A stretch of 64,000 bases of DNA, from assembly GCA_973895155.1 (NCBI GenBank), contig OZ316898.1, forward strand, positions 4,823,079-4,887,078, written 5' to 3'. This document shows, piece after piece, positions 31,301 through 52,900 of this stretch (position 1 is the stretch's first letter; each line of letters opens with the position of its first letter). The position numbers were made by a program, and so were the translations under genes. This DNA is from Marsupella aquatica (Eukaryota; Plantae; Marchantiophyta). The notes below the pieces were generated by a model. The model did no database searches and had not been told where the DNA came from. It was given only the letters and a program-made list of their open reading frames with translations.

Positions 31301-31732
31301 CGGCTCTCAGGGGTTCTTGTCTGCTTCAAGTGCAGCTTGAGGAGTTAAGTACACCCTAATCTGAAACAAACTACATTCCACAATTACAAACAATGCAGGT
31401 AACCACACCATTCTGGTAGCTAAGGTGTCTACCCTTGTTAGATGAATGATATGAGGATGTGATTGCTGCAGCAGAGTATTTGCACCCCAGCACTTGAGTC
31501 CATTAGAAATTAACTGGTCTTGCCCAGGGGACATTTCACTTGAGGACCCATTTTGCCATTAAATCCACTAATCAGAGTACCTAAAAGTTTAAACCGCAGC
31601 CTCATATTGAAATGAAGATCTCCAAGTTCACACAAGTAAGTTGAGCTGTCTATGTGTTTCCAATTCTTTGGATTTCCAATTTGATATAGATTATTGAATC
31701 ATGATCTCCATATTCTAGTTGGTCATTGATTG

Positions 31733-31908
31733 TGTCGTGACATATAGTATTGTAGCCATAGTGTATCAAAAACATACAAGTCACCGGCAAGGCATATGTG
31801 CAAGCTGCTAGCAACCAACATGCATAGAAAAAGTCCAATCACATTCACAAGTGCCAAGAAAAAGCAAATGAAGTGGTATGTACGTAGTGGAGATGTAAAC
31901 CTCTGTAT
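31733..31908 (-). repeat. Split direct repeat unit A (176 bp), 3' terminal copy
   Basis: Direct repeat of 32270-32445 (offset 537). Ends the element in ...CACGACA. Confidence 0.97.
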
Positions 31909-32267
31909 ATAAAAGGCGTAAGAGAAACAATTGTACTGAAATCAAATCGAAAACCGGCAGGATGCCAAGATCGGCCGGGAGCATCTAACGAATCACTGTG
32001 TGAATCCCGTGTACGGAACCGACGAGCACTGTCTGAGCTCTGTCAACAGCGATTCAAGAAGAACTGAAAAATCCACAAAGAAAGACATGCCCTAAGCAAG
32101 CAAAGTCCTGGCGTCACACTAACAAGCACATTTGCTTCAAGAACGGCCCAGACTTGCTACAAGAACATGTCGCTAACTCAGGTAGTACACTAGCCCTAAC
32201 TACATACCTAGCGGGCAGACGAGGGACATGTCGATGTGCATAAGAGGCACTGTCCCTCGGCATGACA
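31909..32267 (-). repeat. Split direct repeat unit B (359 bp), second copy
   Basis: Direct repeat of 41149-41507 (offset 9240). Confidence 0.97.
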
Positions 32268-32269
32268 GC

Positions 32270-32445
32270 TGTCGTGACATATAGTATCGTAGCCATAGTG
32301 TATCAAAAACATACAAGTCACCGGCAAGGCATATGTGCAAGCTGCTAGCAACCAACATGCATAGAAAAAGTCCAATCACATTCACAAGTGCCAAGAAAAA
32401 GCAAATGAAGTGGTATGTACGTAGTGGAGGTGTAAACCTCTGTAT
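32270..32445 (-). repeat. Split direct repeat unit A (176 bp), inner copy
   Basis: Matches 31733-31908 with 2 substitutions. Separated from B by the dinucleotide GC (32268-32269). Confidence 0.97.
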
Positions 32446-32452
32446 CCCCCCC
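32446..32452 (-). promoter_or_regulatory. Polypurine tract (G7) for plus-strand priming
   Basis: GGGGGGG on the minus strand immediately abutting the inner A repeat, ~30 nt after the polyprotein stop. Confidence 0.7.
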
Positions 32453-32494
32453 AGACCACAGCCAAAAGGAGGGCTGAAGAAAATTCAGGTAGCA

Positions 32495-32645
32495 CGTGGA
32501 GCACAAGAAGGGCAAAACCATAACCCTTGTGGCACCTGGGTAAGTTCAGGCCGAAGGCAGAAACGATGGTACCCTCCATTGCAATTGTCACACAACAGCA
32601 TCTGGTCAGCATCATCAATTCGCAAACACACCTTGCAAGGGTAGT
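32495..32645 (-). other. PHD finger at the C-terminus of integrase
   Basis: DYPCKVCLRIDDADQMLLCDNCNGGYHRFCLRPELTQVPQGLWFCPSC is a C4HC3 finger with the hallmark W before the last Cys pair. It is in frame with integrase across the TAG at 32887. Confidence 0.95.
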
Positions 32646-32886
32646 CCACAGGTGGAATCCAAGTAGAAGTCACAATGGTGGGATCTAGGTTAGGCAGATG
32701 ACAAGGGGCGCAGTTCTTGGCATTGTCAGCAATTGTGCGCCCATCTGCCCCTTGTAACTCTAGCACTCCAGACGGTTGAATAGCTTTAACCCTGAGAATA
32801 GTACGACTGGTAGAGGTGTCCAGGGTGTCGTTAGCTTGCCGCTGCAAGTACACAAAATCTCCCACATCAAACTTCCTGACCTTGGG

Positions 32887-33825
32887 CTAAAAAGTGCCAC
32901 CTCGTGTGTGTGCATAACGCAGTGTGTCCCTGTGCTGTGCAATGGTCAAATTCTCCATGGCCATGGGCATAACCCTCCTGAATAGGGCAGCCCTCTCAGA
33001 GATCACATCAGACCAAGTCACAGCTGAATCCAAGTCCACCACCTGAAGCATGTGAGCAGCAATAGCAGAAGGTGGAACTGGGTGACGACCAAACAACAAG
33101 AAGTAGGGAGAAAAGTTAAATAGTGATGCATGTCTGGACATCCTATACCCCATGGCAATGTAGGGTAAGGCCAGGTCCCAATCCTCCTTGTTTTTGGTGA
33201 GGCACATCTTCCGGAGACCCTTCTTGCATGTCTGAACCATGCGCTCTGCCAAGCCATCTGCTTGTGGGTGATCTCGTGATGTCCGGCGATGATCAATGAG
33301 GGCCTGATCAAGCAGCTCCTGGAACTCTCCTCTAAACTCTGAGCCCTGGTCAGTGAGACATTCTGCACAAGCTCCAAAGCGGCTGAGAACTTGTTGCAGG
33401 AATGCCTGGCTGGTGCTACGGGAGGTCTTATCCGGCAATGCCACAAGTTCTATCCACTTGGAGAAATGCTCTATCATGATCATGATGTAGAGATTACCCC
33501 GAGATGTGAGGGGTAATTCTCCAGCCAAATCACATGACCAGCGATAAAACATGCCCTGAATAGGGAGTGGATGAAGTGTGGGTTGCCGAGATGTGAAAGA
33601 AGTCCTCACCCTATCACACTGTTCACACCGGGCAATAACATCTCGAACCTGGCCATGCATGCCTCTCCAATGATAATGAGGGACCAAGAGGCTGTAAGTC
33701 CTCTTAACGCCAAAATGACCAAGCTCAGAATGTACCTTACGGATAAGGCCAACCCTCTCATGAATGGGTGGAACCACCACTTCCCTGTCTGGCAAGCAGC
33801 GCACAAGATGATCTCCCTTCCACAA
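32887..33825 (-). other. DDE integrase with HHCC zinc-binding N-domain
   Basis: HSELGHFG...CEQC; WSCDLAG (D), LTDQGSEF (D), DGLAERMVQT (E); SPYFLLFGR (GPY/F-like). Confidence 0.95.
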
Positions 33826-33989
33826 GTAGCGCTTGGACCTTTGCTGAATTCAGTCTCTCTGGGCAGCAGTAACATGTGTGGGGTACTCCCCATGCTGCAG
33901 AAATCTCAGAGTGTCGTTGTCCTCCCATATGTCCACCACAGGTTGGTCAACAACATAGCATGGCAGCAAAGCAAGATAAGTCGATGCAT

Positions 33990-35463
33990 GAAATGTAGGC
34001 AGGATGGAAACCTGGTCAAAATCTTGCCGTGCATCTGAGGAATCATCAGAGGTAATCAAAGGGCTGCGGGACATAGTGTCAGCATTCTGATGTGTCACAC
34101 TAGGCCTATGAATTACCTCAAAATCATACTCCTGGAGTATGAGCGCCCAACGAGCAAGCTTGCCAGTAAGCTTGTCGTTGGTCATCAACCACTTCAAGGG
34201 CTGGTGGTCGGTGTAGAGAACAAACCTGGTCCCATAGAGGTAGGGCCTGTAATGTATGACAGCCCACACAACAGCAAGGCATTCACCCTCATAAGAAGAA
34301 TAATGACTCTTTGCCTGATTGTTGCTCCTGGATGCAAGGGCAATGACGTACTCTTTACCTTCCTCATCATGCTGGCCCAGAATGGCACCAATCCCAAGGG
34401 CACTCCAATCTCTGTGTAGCACACAGACCTTGCTGAAATCAGGTCTTCTCAGCACCGGGTATTCTGAGAGCTTCTCCTTCAAAGTGACAAATGCTGCCTC
34501 AGCATCTGTACTCCATGTCCAAGTCACATTCTTTTTCAACAAAGCATACAATGGGTGTGCAATGGTACTGAAATCTTTGATGTAGATCCGGTAGTAATTG
34601 CACAACCCAATAAAACTCCTCAAAGTGTGAACATCGGTAGGAATGGGCATTTCCAAGATGGATACCACCTTGGCCCAGTGAGCCATGGTTCCATTTGGAA
34701 GAATGCGATGCCCAAGATATACTACTGATCTGACAGCAAATTCACACTTCTTGGGGTGTATCTTTAGGTTCACCTTCTTAAGCCTCATGAATAGCTCCTC
34801 AAGGTCAAGTAGATGCTGGTCAAATCCTTTGCTATGGACCAACACATCATCAATGTAGCATTTCAGAAACTCAGCACCTTGAAGAACCTGATCCATGACT
34901 CTTTGAAAGAATATGGGCGCATTCTTCAAGCCAAATGGCATCACCAACCACTCCCATAGTTGGTTACTACCATGGAAAGCTGTTTTCTTGCGGTCCTTTG
35001 CAAGCAGCAAAATCTGGTTAAAGCCTTGCCTTAGATCCACAAGAGTGAAGATGTATGAGTCTCCAATGCTGTCAAATAGCTCCTCTGGCCGTGGCATGGG
35101 GTACCTGTCCTGGGGTGTGACCAGGTTCAGTGGCCTGTAGTCCTCACACATGCGCTTCTCTGTCCACAATCCACTGGAATCCTTCTTTGCTGGCATCACT
35201 GTAGCTGCTGCAAAATCTGATGTAGATGGCTGAATAAGACCAGCTTCATAGAGCTCTTGGCATCTCTCATCCACCAGCTGCCACTCATGCTTACTCAAAC
35301 GGTGTCTCCGCCTGAAGATAGGTGTTTCATCAGCCAACTCAATGGAGAACTGCATAGTCTTGCACTTACCCAAGTCCTTCATAGAGAAAGCAAACACATT
35401 CTCATGCTTGAGGAGCAAATTCAGCAGTTGGTCCTTCTGTCTTTTACTCAGGTGGTTGCCCAT
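33990..35463 (-). other. Reverse transcriptase and RNase H domains
   Basis: RT: KRMCEDYRPLN, DLRQGFNQI, VMPFGLKNAP, CYIDDVLVHS, YLGH. RNase H: DWSALGIGAIL, YSSYEGECLAV, YTDHQPL, HQNADTMSR. Confidence 0.96.
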
Positions 35464-35819
35464 GATGAATGTGTAGTTGGCACACTAGGAATAGGACCTG
35501 ATGTACTCGTGCTTGAAGAGCCAGAAGTGCCAGCCTCTCCACTGTCCAAGCTGCTAGCATGCTGCTGATAAGGTGATGAGGCCTCTCCAAGGCCTGCTGT
35601 ATCTGTTGCTCTGGTCTGATCCACACCATGAAACTCAGAAATAATGTCAGCCACATTACAAGGGACCTCCTCCCCCCCAACACTTGGACTGAAGTGGTGA
35701 GTGTTGGACAGAGGTAAGTGCACCTGGTCTGGATGCCATGTAGCAGCACCATGGAGTGGTAGGGCTGGCACTCCTGATGCTGGATGAATGTACATCTGAA
35801 AAAGGATGCAAGTGACCAG

Positions 35820-36740
35820 AAGCCAAGTGAGAGCATTAAGATCCATTACCTTGCCAAGTAAAGCAATCCTGGCCAGCCTGGTGATTTTGGTGTGACCTGT
35901 AGTACCGGGTTGGAAGCCCATAGCCCGTTCTCTCTCCTCAGGACTAGGTTCATCCCATGTACCGGTAGAATGTCGATAAACCAGGCCAGGACCATCACCC
36001 TGAAAAGCATGTGCACCTAGAAAGGACACAAAAGTAGGCCAAGCAGCACGGGGCTGTCCAATGGTATTAGCTGGATACCAAGGTGCTGGCTCTTGCCGTG
36101 TAACCGGTTGGCAAGAACTGTCAGGATCCAAAATCTGGTCCACTGTGAGGTTAGTGTCTCTGGATGTGTGGTGAAGAGCTAACTCCAACAAGGAAGGTGG
36201 TGCAAGGTTAGTCCAAAAGTTACGAAGACGATGTGCATAAGAACCACAGTGCACTGCATCAATGAGAAGGGGTGGTCCCAAGTAGTGCTGGACCACATTG
36301 AAATCCTCTTTGACCTGGAGATGGAGTATTCTCAATGATATAACCAACAGCAGGATAAAGGAATTGAGCCCAGGTGAGAATCTGAACCAATGCTGTGAAA
36401 AGGCCAGAACGAGAATCATGCAGTCTAGCACCGTGACCAGCAGCTGAAAACCCTTGGCATTCCCAACCAGCTATGATCAAATCAAGGGAGCCAAGAAGGG
36501 TTAAGTGCCGGTGCTGGACAAGCTGGATGTCTGGAGGGAAGAAAGAAAATGCGGACTTCCATGCACTATGTGGAAACTGCTGGGGAAATCGCTCAGAAAA
36601 TTCCAGCAGACGGGATTCAGCCACTTGCCTTGCACTTGGATCAATGTCCACGTAGATGTACTGCTTCACCACCATGCCAGACTGTAGGAGAGCTTCCAGG
36701 CCTGTAGAAATGCCACCAAAAAGCTCAAGCAATGTAAGGC
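35820..36740 (-). other. C5 cytosine DNA methyltransferase domain (DNMT3-like, non-permuted motif order)
   Basis: Motif I LLELFGGISTG, II YIYVDID, IV IIAGWECQGFS (catalytic Cys at 36457-36459), V DSRSGLF, VI YIIENT. After the frameshift: VIII SYAHRLRNFWTNL, IX PEERERAMGF, X ARIALLGKVMD. Confidence 0.9.
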
Positions 36741-37079
36741 CATCTGAAGGAGGAGTCCATTTAACTGGTGCGCTCAAGATTGGGGCTATTGGCTGTCCAT
36801 TGTGCTGCCCAAGGTCTTCAAACTTGCGCAATGCAGCCACCAAAGGTCCATGGGCTGCTTGGAGCCGTTGTACCACCTCTGGTTGATGATCCATGTTGCT
36901 GGAAAGTGCTGCTATACGTGCAGCAGCATGTGCAGCAGCCACCTCATCGTCATCCTCCTCAATCCAATCTTGCAATGGGTGGTTGACATAGGTAGCTGTG
37001 TGCACTGCTTTCAACACATAGTGGTGAGCCATAGGTGTATGGGCACCATGCAAATCAAGTGGAATGTAGCCCAAGTGTG

Positions 37080-37460
37080 AGCCATCCGTATGCCAATCAA
37101 CTCTGTAGTATGCATGCTCATGCCAATTGTCAATGGTAAAACCTGGTGGGAACAAAGCCTCCTGGCCAATGAGCACATCATACGTAGTGGCATTGGTAAC
37201 CAAACATCTGACTGGGAAATGCAATTCCTGATCTGTACCTCCATTAAAAGTGAGAGTGAGTAAAGTAGAACTCTCACCCAGCACATCCTCCACAGTGCCA
37301 CTAGCAGTCTGAATGTGCCACCTGGATTGCTGTAAATGATCAGTCAACAGTCCCATCTTCTTGGCAAACTGAATGCCCAATATCACTGGTTGAGCACCTG
37401 TGTCTAGCATGACCACCTGAGGAGTGTGACCCTCCAACTTGACCACTGAATTCCTGTTGT
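37080..37460 (-). other. Retropepsin aspartic protease domain
   Basis: VMLDTGAQPVILG catalytic motif (D at ~37403), flap IQTASG, and YDVLIG closing motif. Confidence 0.88.
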
Positions 37461-38579
37461 CAACAATGGCAATGGTGGTGGAAACTGAAGTCCTATCACT
37501 AGGCACCACTCTCGGCAAATGATGAGGTACCTTGTGAAGGGAGTTAGTATCCATGGTCTTTCCACTCAACAACATAGCCAGGAAAGATGGAGCAGCATGA
37601 CCAGAATCAAGTGTAGCTCTGGTCACACAATCAGCAGCAATCGGTACTGGGGCAACCAAACCAGTGGAAACATGTAATGGAGAAGAAGAAGGTCCACTAT
37701 GTACATGAGATTGGACCTCCAAAACCGGTGTCACAGGGGCTGATGAAGAATGCAGTGAACCCTCTAGCGCTCTGATGACAGCTCTAGCATCCAGCTGTAA
37801 ATCATGGCAACTGAAAAGTGGAGTTGTAAGAATCCTTTGTGCCATACCGGAGGTGAAATGATCAAGCAGCTCAGGAGAAACAACTCCTTGTGAAATGTTA
37901 GCAGCACCTGGTGGTGGAATGGATGTAGTTGTAGCTCCCTCCCCCCTCGCCAACAAGGTGCGCTCTTCAGCAAGTGTGAGTGGCTGAAAAGATTTGGGCA
38001 GGACAGCCCGAGCTCCCCTAGCTCTAGTCATAGGACCAGCAGCAAGACCATCAACCTGTACAATGCGGCGTGTGGGAGCAATACGGGAGGCAGCACTGGC
38101 CTGCTGGTAAGCAAAATAGGAAGGGCAGAATGAATCTGAAAATTCTGCTGTAAGGCCAGGCTGTGTAGCAGAGGATAGCACACACTCACCCATATGAGCA
38201 TCAAATGGCAAGCCATAGAAAGAGCGGGGTATGGGTGTTGAACTGTCAGTGGTGCCTGGGCCAGGGATGGGTTGCACATGACCAACCGGTTGAGAAGGAC
38301 CAGCAGAGGCAGTTGACTTGCCTTTGATGTTGGCAAGTTGGGCACGTAGGGACTCAACCTCATGAGTCAGAGACTGGAGTTGAGTTGCCTGTGCGTTGTG
38401 AGCCTCCTTCTGAGTTGGTTGCTTCTGTTGCTGCTTGGGCGGTTTGTTGGCACTGGATGCTTTGCCACTGGAAGGAGGAGCAGTTGATGCAGTAGGAGCC
38501 CTCCTAGCTGGTGGGGGAGTGGAAGCAGGAGCAGGAGGAGGGGCCTGCTGTCGTAGCTGCTTCCTCTCTGGGAATTTGG

Positions 38580-39834
38580 CAAAACAAACTGCCTCCAAGT
38601 GACCCACCTTTCCGCAAAAATCACAAGACAGGTCCTCAGCAACAATATCACAGTCATTAGCCTTGTGATTGGGGTTACCACAGTAGTTGCAAGATGGCAG
38701 CATGAAAGCAGCATGGGCTGGCTTGGTCTTGGAACCATACTGTGGCACACGGGAAGGAGTGGTCAGTGTAGGGGCAGCAGCCTGGTACCTGGATCGCGGT
38801 GGACGTGCAATACTGGCCTCATAATGTGCATGGGCCAACTCAAGTTTCTCAGCAGTGTCATAGATATTGAGCAGGGTGTAGCTATCTCCAAACTCTGAGA
38901 ATACTTGCTGCAACACTTGCGAATGGAGAGCTGGTGTCCCCTCCAATGCGCGAAGATAGCGATGAGCAGTTTCCAGATCAGTGATGCTCTGGGTGTCCTC
39001 CTTCAGCTTGAGAAGCCGGCGATACATCATCTTCAATGTTTCATCGCGCTGCCTCACAAAGGTGGCCAACTGCATGATTTTATCAGCACTCTTGATTGGG
39101 AATTCCAATTCAAGAACCTGGAAAAACTCAGCCACTGGATCAGCAAAGGTAGGGGAATCAATGGTCGGAGAAATGCCTGATGTAGCCTGTGCCAAGACAG
39201 TGGGAGTAACTGGCGCAGTGGTGGAAACTAAAGTAGGAGGGGAAGTGGCAGGAGCAGCAGCATGGGCTGCAATGGCATTCTGTAAGGCCAATTGTGAGGC
39301 TGCCGTAATTGCACTGGCATAGGTAGGGTTAGGCAACTGTGTGACAGCAAGCAGCCGTTGAGAGTGCTGCTCATACACATCCAACGCCTCATGGTGCACA
39401 TACCTGGCTAGCTACTTAAATGCAAAAGCATTTGTGAAATTGCTGCCATACTTCAACTCCAATTCATAAACGACAGTGTAGAAAGTGGATTTGAACTCAC
39501 GTAAAGAGACAGTGCCTGGCCGCCCGCTGAAGCGCTCAATGCGGCCAGATGAGTGGCTAGCATCCATGCTGTATGTCGGTGAAGCTGGAACAACCACTGA
39601 TGCAGAAGGGGTAAATGGCAATGAAGTGATAGCAGGCTTTGAAGTAGTGGTGAAGCGACCGCCAAATGTAGCAGAAGGATTGCGTGGTGTGGGTGCTGCT
39701 GCTGCTGTCTGCTGATGTCGTCAAAATTGCCGAGGCTCCAATGAAATTGGCACCAATGGTCGTGGATCACTCCGTAAATGGTACCTGGATGTTGGTGGCG
39801 ATGTGCTACTACCTCCTGGCTCCTCTGCTGACAT
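38580..39834 (-). other. Gag region with two CCHC zinc knuckles
   Basis: CNYCGNPNHKANDC and CDFCGKVGHLEAVC (CX2CX4HX4C). Upstream capsid-like helical region (ERFSG...FVRQRDETLKMMYRRL). Confidence 0.85.
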
Positions 39835-41136
39835 GCTGTGGTGTCCTTGCTGGATCGACGGTCTGATGTGTATGCCGGGCCTCAACCTTATGTAGATGAC
39901 ATGTGGCGGCAGCAAAGAAATTGGGAAAATATGGGAAAATATGGGCCCTATGCAACGGTAGTCGAATACACTGGGCCCCTCTTAAGTGTATACACATTTG
40001 GGCCCCATTGTGGACCCGGAAACTGCAGCCAGACCGGTCGAGTGTGTATACACACTCGTAGCACACGGCCCTATGCAGCGCTAGTCGGACGGCTATGGAA
40101 AAGTCGAGGAGTCACTATGGCCGGCGAGGGAAAGAAACGGGAGGGCACGATGCCCTATGTACATACTGCGGAGCACAAAAGGCGTAAGGAGGAAAAGGCA
40201 AGACGCAGCGTGGCAAAGGCGAAGTAAAGAGATGGCGAAAAGGGCGAAAAGAAAAGCATCGGGCCCCCATAGAGGGCTGCGAACTCCCCCCTCCTCTCGT
40301 GCAATGTAATTTGGGCTCGTGCCCTGGCAGGAGCACTCCCGAGAAGGGAGTCGACTTAACTCCCCTCCCCCTTTAATGCTTCATAGGGCCTCGTGCCCTC
40401 TCCTCTCGCAGTCTCGCTTCAACTCCTCCCCTTCGTTAATGCTGAATGGGGCCTTGTGCCTGGCAGAAGTGTGAGTCCCAAGAGGAGGGAGTCGAATGTA
40501 CTCCCTCTCCTCCTTTTAATGCAGCATAGGGCCTCGTGCCCTCTCCCTGCGCTCCTGCCTTCGCTCCCCCTCCCCCTTCTTTAATGCTGCCTAGGGCCTC
40601 GTGCCCTCTCCTGGTGCTCCTTCCCCTTCCTCTGGCAGTCTGGCTGCTTAGAAATGGGCGAGGCAAGGGCACGATGCCCTATGCACAGCCTGCACACCAA
40701 AGCGGAAGGAGGTCGAGAGAAAGAGAAGAAAACAGGGCCCCCAAAGGCGAAAACGTAAAGAGGAGGCCGGGGTGGAAGCGTGTCGAAATGAGGGCACACG
40801 GCCCTATGCAGGCGTCTCGCTGCAACCGAGGCAAAACTCGCCGGCAGCTGTGGCCGGGAATGCGAAAATGGCCCCAAAAACACAAGCGGCAACAAGCGGC
40901 AACAAGCGGCAGTAACAGTAAGAAGGAGCAAATGGGGTCGCGGATGCAACCAGAAAATGAACTCTGGACCTCCTCGGGAGCATTGATATGTGTATACACT
41001 TAAGTATACACATAACAACATAAACCCATAACTTTCAACTCGTCGCTCCGATGTTTGTCGAAGAAATTGCAATGGCTTCACCAGAAATTATCAAAATCAT
41101 CACGAGCAAGCTTCTTTCCCTCACTGCCAACTCGGG

Positions 41137-41150
41137 AGTTCTTCTTGAAT
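41137..41150 (-). promoter_or_regulatory. Putative self-priming primer-binding site
   Basis: Minus-strand ATTCAAGAAGAACT directly at the inner boundary of the 5' B repeat. It is the perfect complement of AGTTCTTCTTGAAT (41305-41292) inside B. No TGG-type tRNA PBS is adjacent. Confidence 0.7.
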
Positions 41151-41507
41151 AAAAGGCGTAAGAGAAACAATTGTACTGAAATCGAATCGAAAACCGGCAG
41201 GATGCCAAGATTGGCCGGGAGCATCTAACGAATCACTGTGTGAATCCCGTGTACGGAACCGACGAGCACTGTCTGAGCTCTATCAACAGCGATTCAAGAA
41301 GAACTGAAAAACCCACAAAGAAAGACATGCCCTAAGCAAGCAAAGTCCTGGCGTCACACTAACAAGCACATTTGCTTCAAGAATGGCCCAGACTTGCTAC
41401 AAGAACATGTCGCTAACTCAGGTAGTACACTAGCCCTAACTACATACCTAGCGGGTAGGCGAGGGACATGTCGATGTGCATAAGAGGCACTGTCCCTCGG
41501 CATGACA
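41149..41507 (-). repeat. Split direct repeat unit B (359 bp), 5' end of element
   Basis: Matches 31909-32267 with 7 substitutions, all transitions. Confidence 0.97.
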
Positions 41508-43174
41508 ATTGAAAGTTGTGGAGCTTCCCCTTTTATGGGCATAGTAGCTTCAAAGACTCCCCATTGCATAGCATTGAATTGAAGTTTTTCACATGTTCAG
41601 GCACACGTTCCCATTGTCCAATGCTTATGTAGAGTGAGTCCAATCGTAGCCCATTAAGCTCACAATGTCCTAAGCACGGATGATCACTTTCCACCTGAGT
41701 TTTTAACTCACATTGAATGGCCCTTTCCAGTAAGCCAGATTCTGTCATCTTCTCCTTATTAGCCAAATGAGGCCTCCCATAGAGCGGACCAGCTTTTTCA
41801 AAGATGACATGACAGGGTGCAAGTTCTAATTAGCAGCTTCTCGATGTGGACTAACAACACGATAATTCATTACATAAGCCTCATTATGATATCAGAACAT
41901 TACTAGGTACTTGTCAAGCAAGTCCCAAGGTACTTATGAAATAAGTCCCTATATGCATGCAACTTCTGCTTTTGGGGATGATGGAAGAAACTCAGGAGTT
42001 TATTGAGTATAGAGTGTGCACAGAGCCTGAGAACCAGACCAGATATATACTGTGATAAGTAGAAGAAGATATCTTTGAATACATCATTCTATGGGAGAGC
42101 CATGTCCCCAACAAAGCTAGAGGAAAATTGTAGGCAAGAAAAACATGTTGAGGAGTAGCCAATGCAACTTCAGGAGGCCACAGTCAATGCTTAGGAAAAC
42201 AACACAACCAAAGTTTTAAACAAAGTCAATACTCTGGCTGTCTTAGAATGATACAAAATTTACACAAGTGACTTTAAGAAGATGCTTCAAATCACCTACA
42301 GTAGGCTATGTCCAAAAGAAGAGGAGAAAGTAAAGATGGTTCCTTCCTTTCCCTGTATGGCCTGGTCAGTGTTACTTTTGTTACCTCTTTTGGGGCAAAC
42401 CCTATGAGACCATTGCCCGCCTACAACATTTACTGTTAGGTGATTGGGTCAAGCTTCAGGTGGAGTACTACAATTGGGTTGGTGACGATTGCATTGCGGA
42501 CAACTGTTTTCCACGAGGTGCCACAAATACCTCTTGTCCGGCGTCATCACTCTGTCAGAGCCTCATGTTAGGAAAGCTAGTGAGTACTCTAGGGCAGCGC
42601 GCTCTTTGGTTTCCCTCTCACCTGCCTATGCATCTGAAGATATCATTGCAGCCCTCGAAACTCATCATGCCCCGAGGGCAGCTGAGGTTCCAACGGGGTT
42701 CCAGGCTTTGTAAGGAGTGTCTTGCTGGAGGATTAATTAGTTTTCCCTATCTCAGGAAATTTTGACTTCTGTCTTCCTTCTTCTGCCGTGACTTTTAACC
42801 AACGGCATGTATGGGATAGGTCGCAGCATTTGCAGGATTGCTTTCTTCCAAATGACTTAGCATCCTGGGGGGCCTGGATTTTCTCAGATTTTCCAAGTGT
42901 GTGCCCATGTTGTGGGCCATTGCAGGGGGGAGTATCTCTCCTGCAGTTGCTCAGATCTTTAGAGTTAGCCTACTTTTGGCCCTGGCCAAGAAGCCTGTGG
43001 GTGATCAGCCTCTAACTTGCAATTGGGGAGGTTTCATAACGGAGATTTAGTCAATTTTTGCCTTAAAACTTGGTCACAGTTTTCATCTCACTTTTTCTCT
43101 CACCAATATAGTGTGGCCACCCATGAGATTGTGAAACTTTAGTTCCTTTGCGGTTGTGAGGGACTCTTGTGCAT

Positions 43175-43428
43175 TTTGGCTCCTTGATCTCCCTGGGCTT
43201 TCCCCCTAGTTTTCTTGCCTTTCTTGGGTCCCCTATCTTTAGGATATGGGCATTTGGGCTCCTTGCAAGACTCCTTGATCTCCCTGGGCTTTCCCCTAGC
43301 TTAGTTGCCTTTATTGGGTCCCCTATCTTTAGGATATGGGTAGTTTGGCTCCTTGGAAGGCTCCTTGATCTCCCTGGGCTTTCCCCCTTGTTGTCTTGCC
43401 GTTATTGGATCCCCTATCTTTAGGATAT
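43175..43428. repeat. Tandem repeat, ~90 bp x3
   Basis: ctccttgatctccctgggctttcccc...cccctatctttaggatat recurring at ~43230, 43320 and 43411. Confidence 0.88.
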
Positions 43429-47242: not shown

Positions 47243-49977
47243 GATGATGCTGATTTAGGGGCCGTGATTAAGTTGAAAGTAGAAAGAGAAGGCATCACTG
47301 CTGTTAATTAGCAAGTACTAGCGGAGAGATCTGGAAAGAAGTAGGGTTCATGTTCATTTGGGAAAGAAAACGGGAGAGAGGTGTGGTACGATGTAGGGAA
47401 GGAAGCGGAGATCTTCTGTAGAAGGGGTAAGATGCGATGCTGTGAAGACGCTCCCCAAGTTAGCTCAGCAAATTAAGGATCCAGAAATTTTGGAATGGAC
47501 GTTAGGACCCGCGTTAGGAAAGATGGTGCAGCTACCCGTGCGACTATCGTAGGAAGAGGAAGCTGATCTGAGGTTCTGGCAATTTTAAAGGTAACGAATG
47601 ATGGTGTTGCTGAGAATATATGGTGGAGAACTTGAGCCGACTGAGGTAGGTTCATCTCCTAAGTGCGGGCGGGAGTGCGGGAGGGAAAGGAAAGGAGCAC
47701 TATGATCGATCCGGATGTAGGAAGGTCTCAACAACCGAGGATCGGCTGAACTCTTATTTGTCGAGTGCGAAGTAAGAACGATTTCGATCTCGTCGGACCT
47801 CTTTGCCGATTTCGTTCAACCCGTGTGGCTCTGAATTCCGATCTGCTCAGGGAGAAACCCATTGAATTGATTTGGCCTTGGCCTGGTGGACTCCAAAAGA
47901 TTGCGTTGCTGCACAGGAAATGTACATGGAAGGCCCGTGAACTCGGTGGAAGCTGGCATGCCGAAAGGTGCTCGGGCTGTTTATGACCAGGGTTTAACCG
48001 AAGGGTTTTTCCTGCGCATTCGGTTTTGTTGGACAATTTTCCTTTCCAAACTTGAGAGACTTGGATGATCATCCAGCCGACCAACTATTTCTCTGGAGGC
48101 GAACGATGATCTCGAGGTGCGAAAACATTGTTGTGCATCACCATCTGCCTTCACTTGCTCACTCACGTGTCTCTTTCCCATTACCAGTCGTTCATGTGAC
48201 TTGGTTCACGTCTAAACAACGCCCGCGAACATTTAGTCATCACTGACTTGATTTTCCTCATCCATCTCTTTCTGTTACGATGGATCATTGGCTCGATGAG
48301 AGCGGCTTACACGACCTTGATTAGAACTCAGGAGATTTCCTTGCCAGGACTACACGGCACGGCACAGCTGTCATGTTCAAGTCATCAGCTGGCAGTCTTG
48401 ACCACTACAGTACCATTACTACAGGACACTCGCCAGCTCCTTCCACATGCTCAATCCAGTCTGAAATCATCCCAACCATCATCTTGCTGAACCAACCTCC
48501 GCAACTGGTTTTACAAATTTGCGTATGCACTCGTAAACCGTGCACACGTACCCGCCGAGTGCTTCGTGGAGCGGATTGTATGTTTCACAAGAAGCTGTAG
48601 GGTAGAGATACGTGTATGGGATATTGGATTCCATCCCGTTCGCACGTGCGCTGTTGGAATGGCCACTTTGGTACTTGTTCGGAAGAATAGGAACTGCGTT
48701 TCGACGAAGTCCTGTTCAGAGTTCGATCCCACAACTGACAGGTTAATTGCTGGTTCGATCCCACAACTGACAAGTTAATTGCGGACAGAAGACAAAGCGA
48801 CTAGCTACTACTGTGTAGTTGGATGTACATAGCTTACTCCATCAATCACCACTCAGGGAGACCAATATCTGTACAATGAGCTCTGAGCCGCATGGCTTGG
48901 AAAGCTGCAGGTAAGGTTTTATGGCACCTGTGGCGCGCTTTGCTGCCAGATTTACGTCGTCAATTGCCTCAAGCTGACTCTCAAAGTTTCGATCTATAGA
49001 TTTCAGATCGATTCAAGGTAGGCCGATCCCCTCACAACTTCCTATCGTCATTCCTAGCCTGCGCCATCCTGATTAAATGTACGTGATAGCTTCATTAAAG
49101 GGTCCAGAAGCTCACAGTTGGATTTGTCTCTCGAAATCGTGGCCACCGGGGTCGGCACTGACAGGTTTGGAAGTGGTTCAAGTTTGGAAATTATACGAGT
49201 CCATCTATTCTTCTGAACCAGCCTGAATCAGGTCGATCATACCTTCGTCACGGTGTCTGACGACACTAAAACCCTCGTACTGCCGATGACCAACCCCTTT
49301 CTTGCTGAAAAGCTTGCTACGAACTGCAGGATACCTGTAAATTCTATGATCTCAAAGTTCATTGACTTGGGTTCCTGGCAAACTAAGACTGGTCGAGCAT
49401 ACACGTCGCACGGGTCCAGTACTTCAAGTGAAAGTATAGGATTCTTGAACACACCTGTCTAACTCATCAAATGCTTAAGATCCACAAGGATACGAGCGAG
49501 GCCTGTGATAATCTGATGAACATGTACCCGCGCGCATGAGGTACGAAGGTCCCTGCTGGCTTGTTATTCGAATACTGACTGATCGATTGACTGTTCAGTC
49601 GTTCAGTATTGATCCCCGCCAGTTTTACATTCTAAACTGAAGCACATCGTAGAGCAGTACTTTGGTCGCTGAAAACCAGAAAAACCATTCGTAGAAGATG
49701 TAGAATGCCATGAAATCATATATCAGGAGCTTGAAATTGTGAATGATCCTGAGAACTTTGTGAACCGCGTGATCGAGTCTTCCCCATCAGTGATGGATTC
49801 ATGTATTGGACATTGTATGATCTGCAGTTGTCAGCTGTCAAAACCATAGTTCTTGATCAAGAACTCGAGCTACATACGTCACGCTGTTGGCTAGCTATGA
49901 AATGTACGCCTGGATGTATTTTCAAGTTGTCATTGTCTGTCCCGTGAACGCACAGGTTTCATTTGATATCTATTTCG

Positions 49978-52900
49978 ATGACGATTTGCCCCTTCAAGCT
50001 GAGACTTTCGAGCTGTGGCGCAGGCTGGTGTTCGTCGACGACGGTCATGAAGAGCAGCAAGTCGCAGCAGAACTTCACATCGACGGTTTATAATCTGTCA
50101 GACTACCTTGAGAATGAACATGTAGAGGAAGGGGCAGGAGTTGTTCTAAGTTCGAGTGGCAACGCTCGAAAGCAGATCTACTTGGATGGTGACTCAGTGG
50201 CGAAGAGGAAATATGAAGATATGACTTCTTGTGGAATTGAAGACGTTGAAGCTGAGATCCATCATGAACAATCGGGTAAGTTCAGTTACTTTAGAGAACA
50301 TAAGAAGAGAAGGCCGCCCGAAGCTGGCAATCCAATGCAATTTCAAACAATTTCTACCACTCCTGTGCAAGTTGAGGGAGTCCAACGGGAGGTCGACGAG
50401 CTTCAAGTTAGGTTGTCAGAGATTTCACGAAGGTCTTGTTCAGTTTCGGGCGTAGAGGTAACTCCAGATATTTGCGGGGGAGAATCCGACTTGACGGCTG
50501 AAAATCAAATGGCAGAAGAAAGCTCAAGATCGAGCAATAATTATGGGTCTTCGATGTTTGAGAGCGCCGCTGAATCGGTTTCAAAGGGACCAATCACGGA
50601 GTTTCGATCCGTTTCTAGCTTAGGAGTTATGCATAGCTTTATGGAGCGCACACACCATGGAGGGAGGGGAGTCAGTGTGATTACATCTAGCGAAGGACCG
50701 GGCCAGATGAGCAGTTTACTTCTTGGGAATGATGGTCACAATACTACGCTGAACGACGCGAACGACGGTCGGGAAGGCGTGAGCAAATCCGAAACAGCAG
50801 CTAGTTATCAGCTTGGATCAGGATCTTCCGAGGCGCCTTCTTTCGTAAAAAATTATACAGCTCCATCCCAGCTTCGGGGAAGAAGCAATCAAGGGTGGTT
50901 ACAACTAGGTGTTGGTAGTAGTTCGGGGCGGCAAACGCCAGCTACACTAAATGTTTACTCGGAGCTCGCTTCGGGTGAGGAAGGTCAGCCTTCGACATTG
51001 AGACAAGACCTCCATGAAGAGAGATCAATTTTCAAGCGGAGGATTACATCGATCGACTTTCCCGTCGCTGCAGACTGTGAAGCAAATAGTAATTATGTCG
51101 TCCCTGAACACTCGAACGCTTCACCAGGTGAATGGCATTTTACAAGGGTCTCGAATGGCATTCCCCCTAAATTTGAAGTGTGCCCCAGTGATCTCTCAGG
51201 TAACCTGAATCCAGCTACGCTTCGGAGTATACCCATTTCTAGTGTGATGAGGAATTTGGACGCTGCCTCGGAAGCGGGAGAAGCTGTAGAACAATCGGAT
51301 TTGTGTATTGGTCGGACGCTTGTCCAAAGAGGCACAGCAAGGCAGGAGCTCGTTTTGGCCCCTCTCAATTGCACAGGGACTGCGGAATGGGAGAACGAAG
51401 GACAGGTGGTGAGCATAGATAAAGCGTTTGAGCTGCGCAGAGATCAAGAAGGCTTTCAAGCTGGCAGGTTTCCTGATCCTAGAGGTGACCGCTTCGGCAG
51501 TGCTTGCCCGCGAGGTCCGGAAATTCACAACGGAGCACGTATCTCGCTATCGACACCAATTACGGGCGTTAATCTTAGATCAGCACCAGCTGCCGCGGCT
51601 GCAGGGCCATCAATGGGCTATGACACTTTCCAATATCACAGAGATAATCCACCTAGCTCTCTCTCCGATTTGCAGCAGAGAAGAGAAGATCCACGTCATG
51701 GCCATCTAGGATTTTCGTGGCTACCTCCACCCGCTGCCGACTCGGCCCCTAAGCTAATACCAACGGCAAACAACTTTCAAGGGTGGATCTCTTCTGAAAT
51801 ACCCTCAACTACGAAATTGACTGCAGCATTGAGCCCCAGTAATGCACGAATGGACAATCCACCCAATCAACAAGCGACGAGAGGTTTGGATGAATGGGGA
51901 ACTTTGTTCAAAGAAGTTGGTCCCAAAATGCTGATTCAATCTTGTCGTGACCTAAGTTCAGAAGGCTCCCCAGCCTTAGTTCAGTCTGCACGTCACGAGA
52001 CGAGTGTCGGATCACAAGAGAATTTGGTGCCTTTCAAACGGGCTATCGAAAACATTCAGAAAGGGCCTCAATGGCCGATTCCGCGAGAAGCCATGAACTC
52101 GATCGCATCTTGGTGCGTGAATGGAAATCTCCAAGGCGTCAGAGGTGAGTCTAGTTTTGAAGGTGACCCTTTGAATCTGAGCGAGAAGCCACCTCAGAGG
52201 CAAAGCTGGCAACCAGCCGGCGGACAGACGTGGCTGCATCATGAAAATGTGACCGCTCTTCACAGACCGGTTCCTGAAACTGCAAGAAAACCCAGGTCGC
52301 AAATGCTTCCACCTGGGTCCATGGGGACGAGTCATGCGGGACTTTGGTTCGTTCTCCAATCTGCAGAGAATCAGTTAAGATCAATTCAACCCTCAGTCTG
52401 CTCTTCAGGGATCGATGTGCTTACTTAATTCTAAACTCACAATTTCTCGTGTCAGTGCGTTGTTTGACATGCATGTGTTTGTTGGGACCATCATGAATTT
52501 TTCGTTCCAACAGTTACAAAACTGTACACGAATGTTCGGTTCTAGCTGCAGCGGTCAAATTGCTGACAACCTTGACCTTTCGCGGTCCTGTTGACAGCCA
52601 TCATTCTTATGCGATATGCGTCAGAATGCAAATTTCGTAAACACGGACGTTTAAGCTACATTCTCATAATGACTCGTAGGAAGTCTTTAGTCATGCAGAA
52701 TGCTGAGTTCCTGTGGACGTATCCGAGCTCAGCTGTCCAGAGTACATGATGGTTAGGCTGATTGGATCTATAGTTTGCAGGCATATTCCAAGTAAGTTAT
52801 GTGGTCCACGATCCATTGCCTTTAGATTCTACTGTTTTCTTGTGCGGATAGATATTGCCTAAAATTTAGTCAACTTACTCGTGACATCTTCCTGCGATCA

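What the first reader, a model, noticed from the sequence alone, without database searches (positions are those of the whole stretch)
41137..41310. tRNA-independent self-priming: the PBS is complementary to the predicted first 14 nt of the transcript
Seen: the sequence at the inner edge of the 5' repeat (ATTCAAGAAGAACT, 41150-41137) is the exact complement of AGTTCTTCTTGAAT at 41305-41292. That site is preceded by TTTTC, giving an initiator-like TC-A(+1)-GTT. No tRNA-type TGG PBS abuts the repeat. Known: Tf1/Tf2 of fission yeast prime minus-strand synthesis with the 5'-terminal 11 nt of their own RNA. Inference: the TSS is at 41305, the RNA 5' end folds onto the PBS, and it is cleaved to make the primer.
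Basis: partly seen in the sequence, partly recalled or inferred. Interest (0 to 1): 0.82.

Follow-up and report, generated by a model that had tools for sequence, protein, structure and literature searches.

The report
Self-primed retrotransposon with permuted repeats
A plant-lineage Ty3/gypsy retrotransposon very probably starts copying its RNA into DNA with the first 12 bases of its own transcript instead of a tRNA, a mechanism known from fission-yeast Tf1, here in an unusual family that carries a DNA methyltransferase and has rearranged terminal repeats.

Summary
On the minus strand, AGTTCTTCTTGAAT (41305..41292, inside the 5' repeat) is the exact complement of ATTCAAGAAGAACT (41150..41137, at the repeat's inner edge). 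No internal 25-nt control window reached that length (0 of 5000).

Five further lineages show the same pairing with largely or wholly different sequences. They come from a Sphagnum-like metagenome contig, three from the liverwort Calypogeia and an ENA contig, and the alga Closterium; RT identity is 41-82%. Eleven of 12 paired positions show compensatory double changes, and position 1 is always A. Where the joint is unambiguous, the repeat ends exactly 12 nt before the end of the complementarity, implying a 12-nt primer. Several relatives have a TATA-like box about 31 nt upstream of that A. No candidate PBS starts with TGG.

The TSS and the cleavage remain inferred.

The element is not a plain LTR element. 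Its layout is L-PBS-gag/PR/DNMT/RT/RH/IN/PHD-G run-B-GC-L-B, with 4-bp target duplications. This matches the published Klebsormidium KnitGypsy-Dnmt3 layout: Gypsy domains with DIRS-like repeats.

Self-priming itself is known, so the finding is a new member of a known kind. The permuted repeats with an internal palindromic integrase site are the more novel lead.

The parts
41508..41511 (-). 5' target-site duplication CAAT
   Evidence: CAAT lies directly before L1 and again directly after B2. 4-bp duplications occur at the same two positions in L002 GGTC, L004 AGTG, L009 CCTT and L012 GTCA.
41149..41507 (-). L1, the 5' copy of repeat L (359 nt, starts TGTCATGCC, ends CCTTTTAT)
   Evidence: 98% identical to 32267..31909. 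The 7 differences are all transitions.
41292..41305 (-). 5' motif AGTTCTTCTTGAAT; inferred transcript start at 41305 (A after TTTTC; TCAGTTC fits YYANWYY). The first 12 nt are the inferred primer.
   Evidence: Exact complement of the PBS. Position 203 of 359 in L. The equivalent motif in relatives starts with A after a pyrimidine and has a TATA-like box at about -31.
41137..41148 (-). Primer-binding site TCAAGAAGAACT (12 nt abutting L1; the complementarity continues 2 nt into L, to 41150)
   Evidence: The 12-nt distance from the repeat end to the end of complementarity recurs in L002, L009 and L004 and is consistent in L012 and L011.
39400..41136 (-). Long leader between the PBS and the gag ORF. 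It has no conserved ORF and contains a 143-nt tandem duplication (40341-40605).
   Evidence: All three frames carry 11-15 stops. The ORFs at 40581-41081 and 39453-39770 have no Pfam hit and no convincing tblastn match in relatives. Tandem repeat.
36259..39399 (-). ORF with weak CCHC knuckle (gag), aspartic protease and the start of a C5 DNA methyltransferase domain
   Evidence: Pfam: gag-asp_proteas 8.5e-07, DNA_methylase 2.5e-05 at residues 957-1009, zf-CCHC weak.
35448..36431 (-). Middle ORF (rest of the methyltransferase region), read in a different frame from its neighbours, so this copy carries two frameshifts
   Evidence: Aligns to the stretch between PR and RT in relatives, where it is in frame. 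Relatives have PF00145 there. No Pfam hit in the window copy.
33850..35463 (-). Reverse transcriptase and RNase H
   Evidence: Pfam RVT_1 1.3e-28, RT_RNaseH 1.2e-34. 82% identical to a Calypogeia fissa protein.
32887..33825 (-). DDE integrase (H2C2 zinc finger plus rve core)
   Evidence: Pfam Integrase_H2C2 2.3e-14, rve 5.4e-14.
32485..32865 (-). PHD finger at the integrase C-terminus, where chromoviruses carry a chromodomain
   Evidence: Pfam PHD 2.3e-12, no chromodomain hit. PHD is present in relatives.
32446..32452 (-). G run (GGGGGGG), the inferred polypurine plus-strand primer, directly before B1
   Evidence: A run of 6-9 G (5 in L011) sits at or within 2 nt of the start of B1 in every relative examined.
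32270..32445 (-). B1, internal copy of repeat B (176 nt, ends GTCACGACA)
   Evidence: 99% identical to 31908..31733.
32264..32273 (-). Palindrome GACA-GC-TGTC joining the B1 end to the L2 start. The two halves are the sequences found at the outer ends of the integrated element, so this is the inferred integrase recognition site.
   Evidence: ACA-GC-TGT is conserved at the B1|L2 junction in L001, L004 (two elements), L005, L006, L009, L010, L011 and L012; it reads AC in L002 and L007.
31909..32267 (-). L2, the 3' copy of repeat L, with a second copy of the 5' motif at 32065..32052
31733..31908 (-). B2, terminal copy of repeat B. The L2|B2 joint is exactly L end joined to B start (TTTTAT|ATACAG).
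   Evidence: The same precise joint is seen in L002, L009 and L004.
31729..31732 (-). 3' target-site duplication CAAT

Best explanation
The region is the 5' end of a 9.8-kb Ty3/gypsy-type retrotransposon on the minus strand (41507..31733). Its minus-strand DNA synthesis is primed by its own RNA. Inferred steps: transcription starts at the A at 41305, which is position 203 of the 359-nt repeat L. The first 14 nt of the RNA pair with the site at the inner edge of L, closing a 157-nt R-U5 loop. The element's RNase H cuts after nt 12, as Tf1 does after nt 11. The 12-nt RNA then primes synthesis starting at the last base of L. Shown here: the complementarity, its conservation with covariation, and the fixed 12-nt distance to the repeat boundary. 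Also shown: the absence of a tRNA-type PBS and the layout L-PBS-coding-G run-B-GC-L-B with 4-bp target duplications. Second layer, inferred: reverse transcription should give a DNA whose terminal repeat is B-GC-L, with plus-strand primer at the G run and minus-strand primer at the PBS. The L2|B2 joint is then the two cDNA ends joined head to tail. The integrase inserts the element by cutting the CA-GC-TG palindrome inside the repeat, which leaves TG...CA ends and a split repeat.
For: Exact 14-nt complement, with 0 of 5000 control windows as long. The same relation holds in five further lineages whose LTRs show no blastn match (L002) or only a 38-50-nt match (L001) to the window's (not tested for the others), with RT identity 41-82%. 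Eleven of 12 base pairs show double compensatory changes; pair 1 is invariantly A-T. The 5'/PBS helix closes the minimum-energy fold in all six lineages, with pair probability 0.80-0.98. The L boundary defined by the L2|B2 joint lies 12 nt before the end of complementarity in window, L002, L009 and L004, and is consistent in L012 and L011. TATAAAAGG, TATATAAG and TATATCTC lie at about -31 in L002/L009, L005 and L004. The PBS 12-mers all lack a 5' TGG. The Tf1 mechanism (11-nt primer, cut between nt 11 and 12) is described in PMC7175516; predicted self-priming in plant elements is in PMC6317226. For the layout: TSDs flank L1 start and B2 end in five independent insertions, and the palindrome and G run are conserved. 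The same repeat layout is reported for KnitGypsy-Dnmt3 (PMC5890265, Fig. 4c legend).
Against: There is no direct evidence for the transcript start or the cleavage. The window copy has no TATA box, only an initiator-like TCAGTTC. The overall fold energy of R-U5-PBS is no better than shuffles (z = -0.71), so only the terminal helix is special. The window copy is itself defective (two frameshifts, in-frame stops) and 2% diverged between repeats, so it is a fossil of the mechanism. How the L|B joint is made, and why only one of the two possible permutations is seen (11 of 11 3' ends), is not explained by a simple circle model.
Confidence: 0.8

Rival explanations
1. The pairing is real and selected but serves another purpose, such as cyclising the leader for packaging, dimerisation or translation control. 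Reverse transcription would then be primed by something else.
For: Covariation and folding prove a conserved helix, not priming. Long-range 5' interactions exist in other retroelements (general knowledge).
Against: The 3' arm always abuts the repeat. The repeat boundary, which is set by where minus-strand DNA starts, lies a constant 12 nt from the end of the helix. No alternative PBS is conserved downstream: the window has TGGCAGTGAGGG at +19, but relatives have no TGG there.
Confidence: 0.1
2. A cellular tRNA, half-tRNA or other small RNA primes at this site, and the match to the LTR is incidental.
For: Most plant LTR elements use tRNA primers, and about 2% use half-tRNAs (PMC6317226). No host tRNA set was available to compare (searches found no tRNA genes).
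Against: No PBS starts with TGG. The PBS differs at 11 of 12 positions among lineages and always matches its own LTR, which a conserved tRNA cannot do. Chance match is rejected.
Confidence: 0.04
3. The inverted repeat is a chance match or a by-product of how the repeat was formed, with no function.
For: With up to 2 mismatches the 14-mer is not rarer in the window than in shuffles.
Against: An exact 14-mer at this specific position scored 0 of 5000 in each of five lineages. It is conserved with sequence turnover over liverwort, moss-like and alga lineages.
Confidence: 0.01

Closest known systems
Tf1/Tf2 of Schizosaccharomyces pombe and the Tf1/sushi group (also Tj1, Tcn1)
   Same: There is no tRNA PBS. 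The PBS next to the 5' LTR is complementary to the start of the element's own RNA. A short primer is inferred (11 nt in Tf1, 12 nt here). Both are Ty3/gypsy with PR-RT-RH-IN order (PMC7175516, PMC4600332).
   Different: This family has a PHD finger instead of a chromodomain after the integrase, a DNA methyltransferase between PR and RT, and split repeats instead of simple LTRs. The duplex runs 0-3 nt past the inferred cut. The precise L|B joint suggests the primer is removed, whereas Tf1 is reported to keep it (title of ref. 61 in PMC6317226). Clade membership was not tested.
Plant elements with predicted self-priming (Tcn1 clade in mosses and club-mosses; TAR lineage of Ty1/copia)
   Same: Streptophyte hosts. 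Self-priming is predicted from sequence alone, in 12% of surveyed plant elements (PMC6317226).
   Different: Those are chromodomain chromoviruses or copia elements with ordinary LTRs. No DNMT/PHD family or split repeats are described there. Klebsormidium, Marchantia and liverworts are not mentioned.
KnitGypsy-Dnmt3 of Klebsormidium nitens (de Mendoza et al. 2018, PMC5890265)
   Same: Gypsy domain set with a C5 DNA methyltransferase in Pol, and the repeat order A-coding-B-A-B noted by the authors as DIRS-like. The host is a streptophyte.
   Different: Sequence relatedness to the K. nitens element could not be checked: no Klebsormidium protein surfaced. In the passages retrieved (search terms did not include PBS), that paper does not discuss priming, PBS, target duplications or the palindrome.
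PAT/Ngaro/VIPER tyrosine-recombinase retrotransposons (split direct repeats A1-B1-A2-B2)
   Same: Same repeat topology (PMC4157794).
   Different: Those encode a tyrosine recombinase. This family encodes a DDE integrase, has TG...CA ends and makes 4-bp duplications.
Integrase cleavage of the palindromic LTR-LTR junction of retroviral 2-LTR circles (PFV, HIV-1 in vitro)
   Same: A CA...TG palindrome made of the two integrase-recognised ends is cut internally by a retroviral-type integrase (PMC1180852, PMC1905944).
   Different: Here the palindrome sits inside the reverse-transcription-defined repeat and is inherited through the RNA. Its use as the normal integration site is inferred, not shown.

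Membership tests
Self-priming LTR retrotransposons (Tf1 type, mechanistic class) | No tRNA-type PBS (5'-TGG) next to the 5' LTR | tested here: met
   The sequence after L1 is TCAAGAAGAACT. None of six lineages has TGG at the LTR edge.
Self-priming LTR retrotransposons (Tf1 type, mechanistic class) | The PBS abutting the LTR is complementary to a site inside the LTR, and this is conserved | tested here: met
   Perfect complements of 12-16 nt in six lineages, with 11 of 12 positions covarying.
Self-priming LTR retrotransposons (Tf1 type, mechanistic class) | The complementary site is the very 5' end of the mRNA | not testable with these tools
   Support is indirect only: an invariant A after a pyrimidine, and TATA-like boxes at about -31 in relatives. 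Logan contigs gave no transcript ends.
Self-priming LTR retrotransposons (Tf1 type, mechanistic class) | RNase H cut in the RNA duplex releases a short primer | not testable with these tools
   Indirect: the L boundary lies 12 nt before the end of complementarity.
Tf1/sushi clade (phylogenetic group of chromoviruses) | Chromodomain at the integrase C-terminus | tested here: not met
   Pfam finds a PHD finger and no chromodomain. Relatives also carry PHD.
Tf1/sushi clade (phylogenetic group of chromoviruses) | RT/IN phylogeny places the element within the clade | not tested
   No reference Tf1/sushi/Tcn1 sequences were available through the tools. The nearest non-family hits carry PF00385 and PF24626 (SH3_Tf2-1), which is only a hint.
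Ty3/gypsy LTR retrotransposons | Pol order PR-RT-RNase H-integrase with a DDE integrase | tested here: met
Ty3/gypsy LTR retrotransposons | Two identical LTRs with TG...CA ends and a short target duplication | tested here: inconclusive
   TG...CA ends and a 4-bp TSD are present, but the repeats are split: L at the 5' end and B-GC-L-B at the 3' end.
KnitGypsy-Dnmt3-like elements | C5 DNA methyltransferase inside a Gypsy Pol | tested here: met
   There is a partial PF00145 hit in the window copy. The domain is precomputed in relatives P0005 and L006 and in Closterium proteins.
KnitGypsy-Dnmt3-like elements | Repeat order A-coding-B-A-B | tested here: met
   compared with the figure legend in PMC5890265.
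DIRS order (PAT/Ngaro) | Tyrosine recombinase instead of a DDE integrase | tested here: not met
   An rve integrase was found and no Phage_integrase hit appeared in any ORF scanned.

The most novel reading that the evidence does not exclude
In this family the repeat made by reverse transcription (B-GC-L, bounded by the G-run primer and the self-primed PBS) is circularly permuted relative to the ends used by the integrase. The two cDNA ends are joined precisely (L|B). A DDE integrase then inserts the element by cutting an inherited CA-GC-TG palindrome inside the repeat, always in the 5' copy. That would make it a retrotransposon whose integrase works on an internal junction-type site, as IS-element circles or DIRS-like elements do. 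It would also explain why a Gypsy element has DIRS-like repeats.
Probability: 0.45. Interest if true: 0.8.

Novelty: new member of a known kind. Interest (0 to 1): 0.55.

Why it matters
Self-priming has been demonstrated experimentally for Tf1 and is otherwise predicted from sequence, so well-supported cases outside the Tf1/sushi chromoviruses matter. This one comes with unusually clean comparative proof: full covariation and a fixed 12-nt primer length. It lies in a streptophyte family that carries its own DNA methyltransferase and a PHD finger.

The priming site also acts as a ruler. It shows that the L|B joint is exactly the two predicted cDNA ends joined, while the integrated ends lie at a conserved palindrome. 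That turns the unexplained 'DIRS-like repeats in a Gypsy element' (PMC5890265) into a testable replication model.

Tried and rejected
- **LTR comparison across lineages.** blastn of the window's L and B against L001-L003 and L007-L009 found only two marginal 38-50-nt matches in L001. This was useful, because the lineages can be treated as largely independent.
- **L003.** No inverted pair of 10 nt or more upstream of gag. It is probably a decayed copy and was left out.
- **L009.** The 5' motif has one point mutation in the 5' copy, so it was counted with L002.
- **tRNA genes.** None in the window or in 11 loci, so no direct PBS-against-tRNA comparison was possible.
- **Rfam.** Nothing relevant in the element.
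- **Klebsormidium.** None of the three word-index protein searches returned a K. nitens protein.
- **Transcript ends.** Logan contigs were fetched in the hope of transcript ends, but they are internal fragments.
- **Old Tf1 papers.** PMC1369541 and PMC1563812 are not held.
- **Plain LTR layout.** Rejected because B2 lies inside the target duplication in five insertions.
- **Larger 537-nt LTR with a truncated 5' copy.** Rejected because the 5' flank carries the TSD directly before L.
- **Random opening of a 2-LTR circle.** This predicts two permutations, but only one is seen (11 of 11 3' ends). The L005 tandem array fits unequal recombination between copies.
- **The large HMMER library search** was not run. 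It was not needed and was flagged as costly.

Full report
**1. Observation.** The element lies on the minus strand. TTTTC then AGTTCTTCTTGAAT occupies 41310..41292, and ATTCAAGAAGAACT occupies 41150..41137.
- The pair is the only perfect inverted repeat of 14 nt or more in 41000-41600.
- The 14-mer occurs three times exactly in the window: in both repeat copies (41305..41292 and 32065..32052) and, complemented, at the PBS.
- Of 5000 random 25-nt windows from the element's interior, none has a perfect complement of 14 nt or more in the repeat; the maximum was 10.
- No TGG abuts the repeat.

**2. What the element is.** Pfam on the minus-strand ORFs gives the following:
- a weak CCHC knuckle, an aspartic protease and the start of a C5 DNA methyltransferase (36259-39399);
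- RT and RNase H (33850-35463);
- an H2C2/rve integrase (32887-33825);
- a PHD finger (32485-32865).

This is a Ty3/gypsy gene order with two extra domains. The stretch between PR and RT (35448-36431) is read in another frame, whereas relatives have it in frame and score PF00145 there. Stops separate RT, IN and PHD. The window copy is therefore defective.

**3. The repeats are split, not simple LTRs**. In minus-strand order the layout is:
- CAAT (41511..41508)
- L1 (41507..41149, 359 nt)
- PBS
- leader and coding region
- GGGGGGG (32452..32446)
- B1 (32445..32270, 176 nt)
- GC
- L2 (32267..31909)
- B2 (31908..31733)
- CAAT (31732..31729)

The B1 end, GC and L2 start form the perfect palindrome GACAGCTGTC. 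Its two halves are the sequences at the outer ends of the integrated unit (TGTC...GACA). L1 and L2 differ at 7 of 359 positions and B1 and B2 at 2 of 176; all nine differences are transitions.

**4. Relatives.** The RT ORF finds proteins from the liverwort Calypogeia fissa (82%), many metagenome contigs, and Closterium (about 40-48%). The methyltransferase region also hits Sphagnum magellanicum. DNA around twelve proteins was fetched.
- The G run-B-GC-L-B layout at the 3' end is present in 11 element copies: window, L001, L002, L004 (two elements), L006, L007, L009, L010, L011 and L012.
- The alternative permutation was never seen.
- L005 is a tandem array in which units share one B-GC-L. This is as expected from unequal recombination.
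- Four-bp target duplications flank L1 start and B2 end in L002 (GGTC), L004 (AGTG), L009 (CCTT) and L012 (GTCA).

The integrated unit really is L...B. The layout matches what de Mendoza et al. wrote of KnitGypsy-Dnmt3: repeats as in DIRS, domains as in Gypsy (PMC5890265).

**5. Test of the self-priming idea.** blastn of the window's L and B against L001-L003 and L007-L009 found nothing beyond two 38-50-nt matches in L001, so these lineages are close to independent tests. In each lineage where the 5' end is present, the sequence abutting L is the perfect complement of a site inside L:

| Lineage | 5' motif | PBS |
|---|---|---|
| window | AGTTCTTCTTGAAT | ATTCAAGAAGAACT |
| L002 (L009 has one mutation) | AGTTTTTCTAGAATT | AATTCTAGAAAAACT |
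| L004 | AGTTCTGAAGTGAAT | ATTCACTTCAGAACT |
| L012 | AGTTCTCTAAGT | ACTTAGAGAACT |
| L005 | AACTCTCAGCAGAAT | ATTCTGCTGAGAGTT |
| L011 (Closterium) | ACTGTGCGTATGTT | AACATACGCACAGT |

- The control gave 0 of 5000 in every intact lineage with a defined L1 boundary (five; L005 not run).
- Over the first 12 pairs, 11 positions show changes on both sides that keep the pair. Pair 1 is always A-T.
- Folding each R-U5-PBS stretch puts this helix as the closing stem, with mean pair probability 0.80-0.98.
- The whole window fold is no more stable than shuffles, so only this helix is special.

**6. Primer length.** The end of L can be read independently from the L2|B2 joint. In window, L002, L009 and L004 the joint is unambiguous, and L ends exactly 12 nt before the end of the complementarity. 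In L012 and L011 a one-base ambiguity allows 12 as well.

This is what is expected if minus-strand DNA starts at the 3' end of a 12-nt primer. Tf1 uses 11 nt, cut between nt 11 and 12 (PMC7175516). The duplex continues 0-3 nt into L, so the cut would lie inside an RNA duplex.

**7. Transcript start.**
- The first base of the motif is A after C or T in all lineages.
- TATAAAAGG (L002, L009), TATATAAG (L005) and TATATCTC (L004) begin 31-32 nt upstream.
- The window copy lacks a TATA box but reads TCAGTTC, an initiator-like match.

This is indirect. No transcript ends could be obtained.

**8. tRNA alternative.** No tRNA genes were found in the window or the loci, so no direct comparison was possible. 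No PBS begins with TGG. A conserved host tRNA also cannot match six different PBS sequences that each match their own LTR.

**9. How the whole cycle probably runs (inferred).**
- The G run before B and the PBS after L mark the two priming sites. Reverse transcription should therefore give B-GC-L at both ends.
- The L2|B2 joint is exactly the predicted right end joined to the predicted left end, with no extra bases. This suggests that the primer is removed.
- The integrated ends are instead the two halves of the internal palindrome, with GC lost and a 4-bp duplication made. This is what a DDE integrase cutting CA^GC on both strands would produce.
- Retroviral integrases can cut such palindromic junctions (PMC1180852, PMC1905944).
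- A randomly opened 2-LTR circle would give two permutations. Only one is seen, so either the 5' copy is preferred (for example because it becomes double-stranded first) or the route differs. This part is a hypothesis.

**10. Comparison and novelty.** Self-priming is established for Tf1 and predicted for Tj1, Tcn1, sushi and 12% of plant LTR elements (Tcn1 clade, TAR) (PMC7175516, PMC4600332, PMC6317226). The finding is therefore a new member of a known kind.

It is not shown to belong to the Tf1/sushi clade. It has a PHD finger, not a chromodomain, and no phylogeny with references could be made. I found no paper that links self-priming with this methyltransferase-bearing family or with split repeats.

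**11. Limits.**
- The large HMMER search was not run.
- The contig is not human.

Noticed in passing
window 31733-32445 and 41149-41507: The repeats are split (L ... B-GC-L-B), with a perfect palindrome GACAGCTGTC at the B1|L2 junction and a 4-bp duplication CAAT outside L1 and B2. The same layout is seen in 11 copies from liverwort, Sphagnum-like, Closterium and other contigs.
   Followed up: yes
window 35448-36431 and 36259-36540: A C5 DNA methyltransferase domain sits between protease and RT. In this copy it is broken by two frameshifts; it is intact in relatives such as P0005 and P0121.
   Followed up: partly
window 32485-32865: A PHD finger follows the integrase, where chromoviruses carry a chromodomain. 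This is conserved across the family.
   Followed up: partly
L004 2960-2993; L012 3920-3950; L004 1995-2025: In two lineages a copy of part of the PBS sequence lies just upstream of the 5' motif, forming a local hairpin around the inferred start site (for example ATTCACTTC-AGTTCT-GAAGTGAAT). This is unexplained.
   Followed up: no
L005 1-15825: Two element units lie in tandem, sharing one B-GC-L between them, on a contig whose name ends in _c. It could be unequal recombination or an assembly of circular or concatemeric DNA.
   Followed up: partly
window L1 vs L2, B1 vs B2: All nine differences between the repeat copies are transitions, as expected from deamination of methylated cytosines.
   Followed up: no
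window 40341-40605: A 143-nt tandem duplication (1.9 copies, 78% match) lies inside the long non-coding leader between the PBS and gag.
   Followed up: no
window 49963-52428 (+): An 821-aa open reading frame with no Pfam match.
   Followed up: partly
window 43178-43428: A 90-nt tandem repeat (2.8 copies, 88% match) lies about 1.7 kb from the element's 5' end.
   Followed up: no
L010 4446-5609: One family member is inserted into the RNase H region of another copy in the opposite orientation (nested insertion).
   Followed up: no
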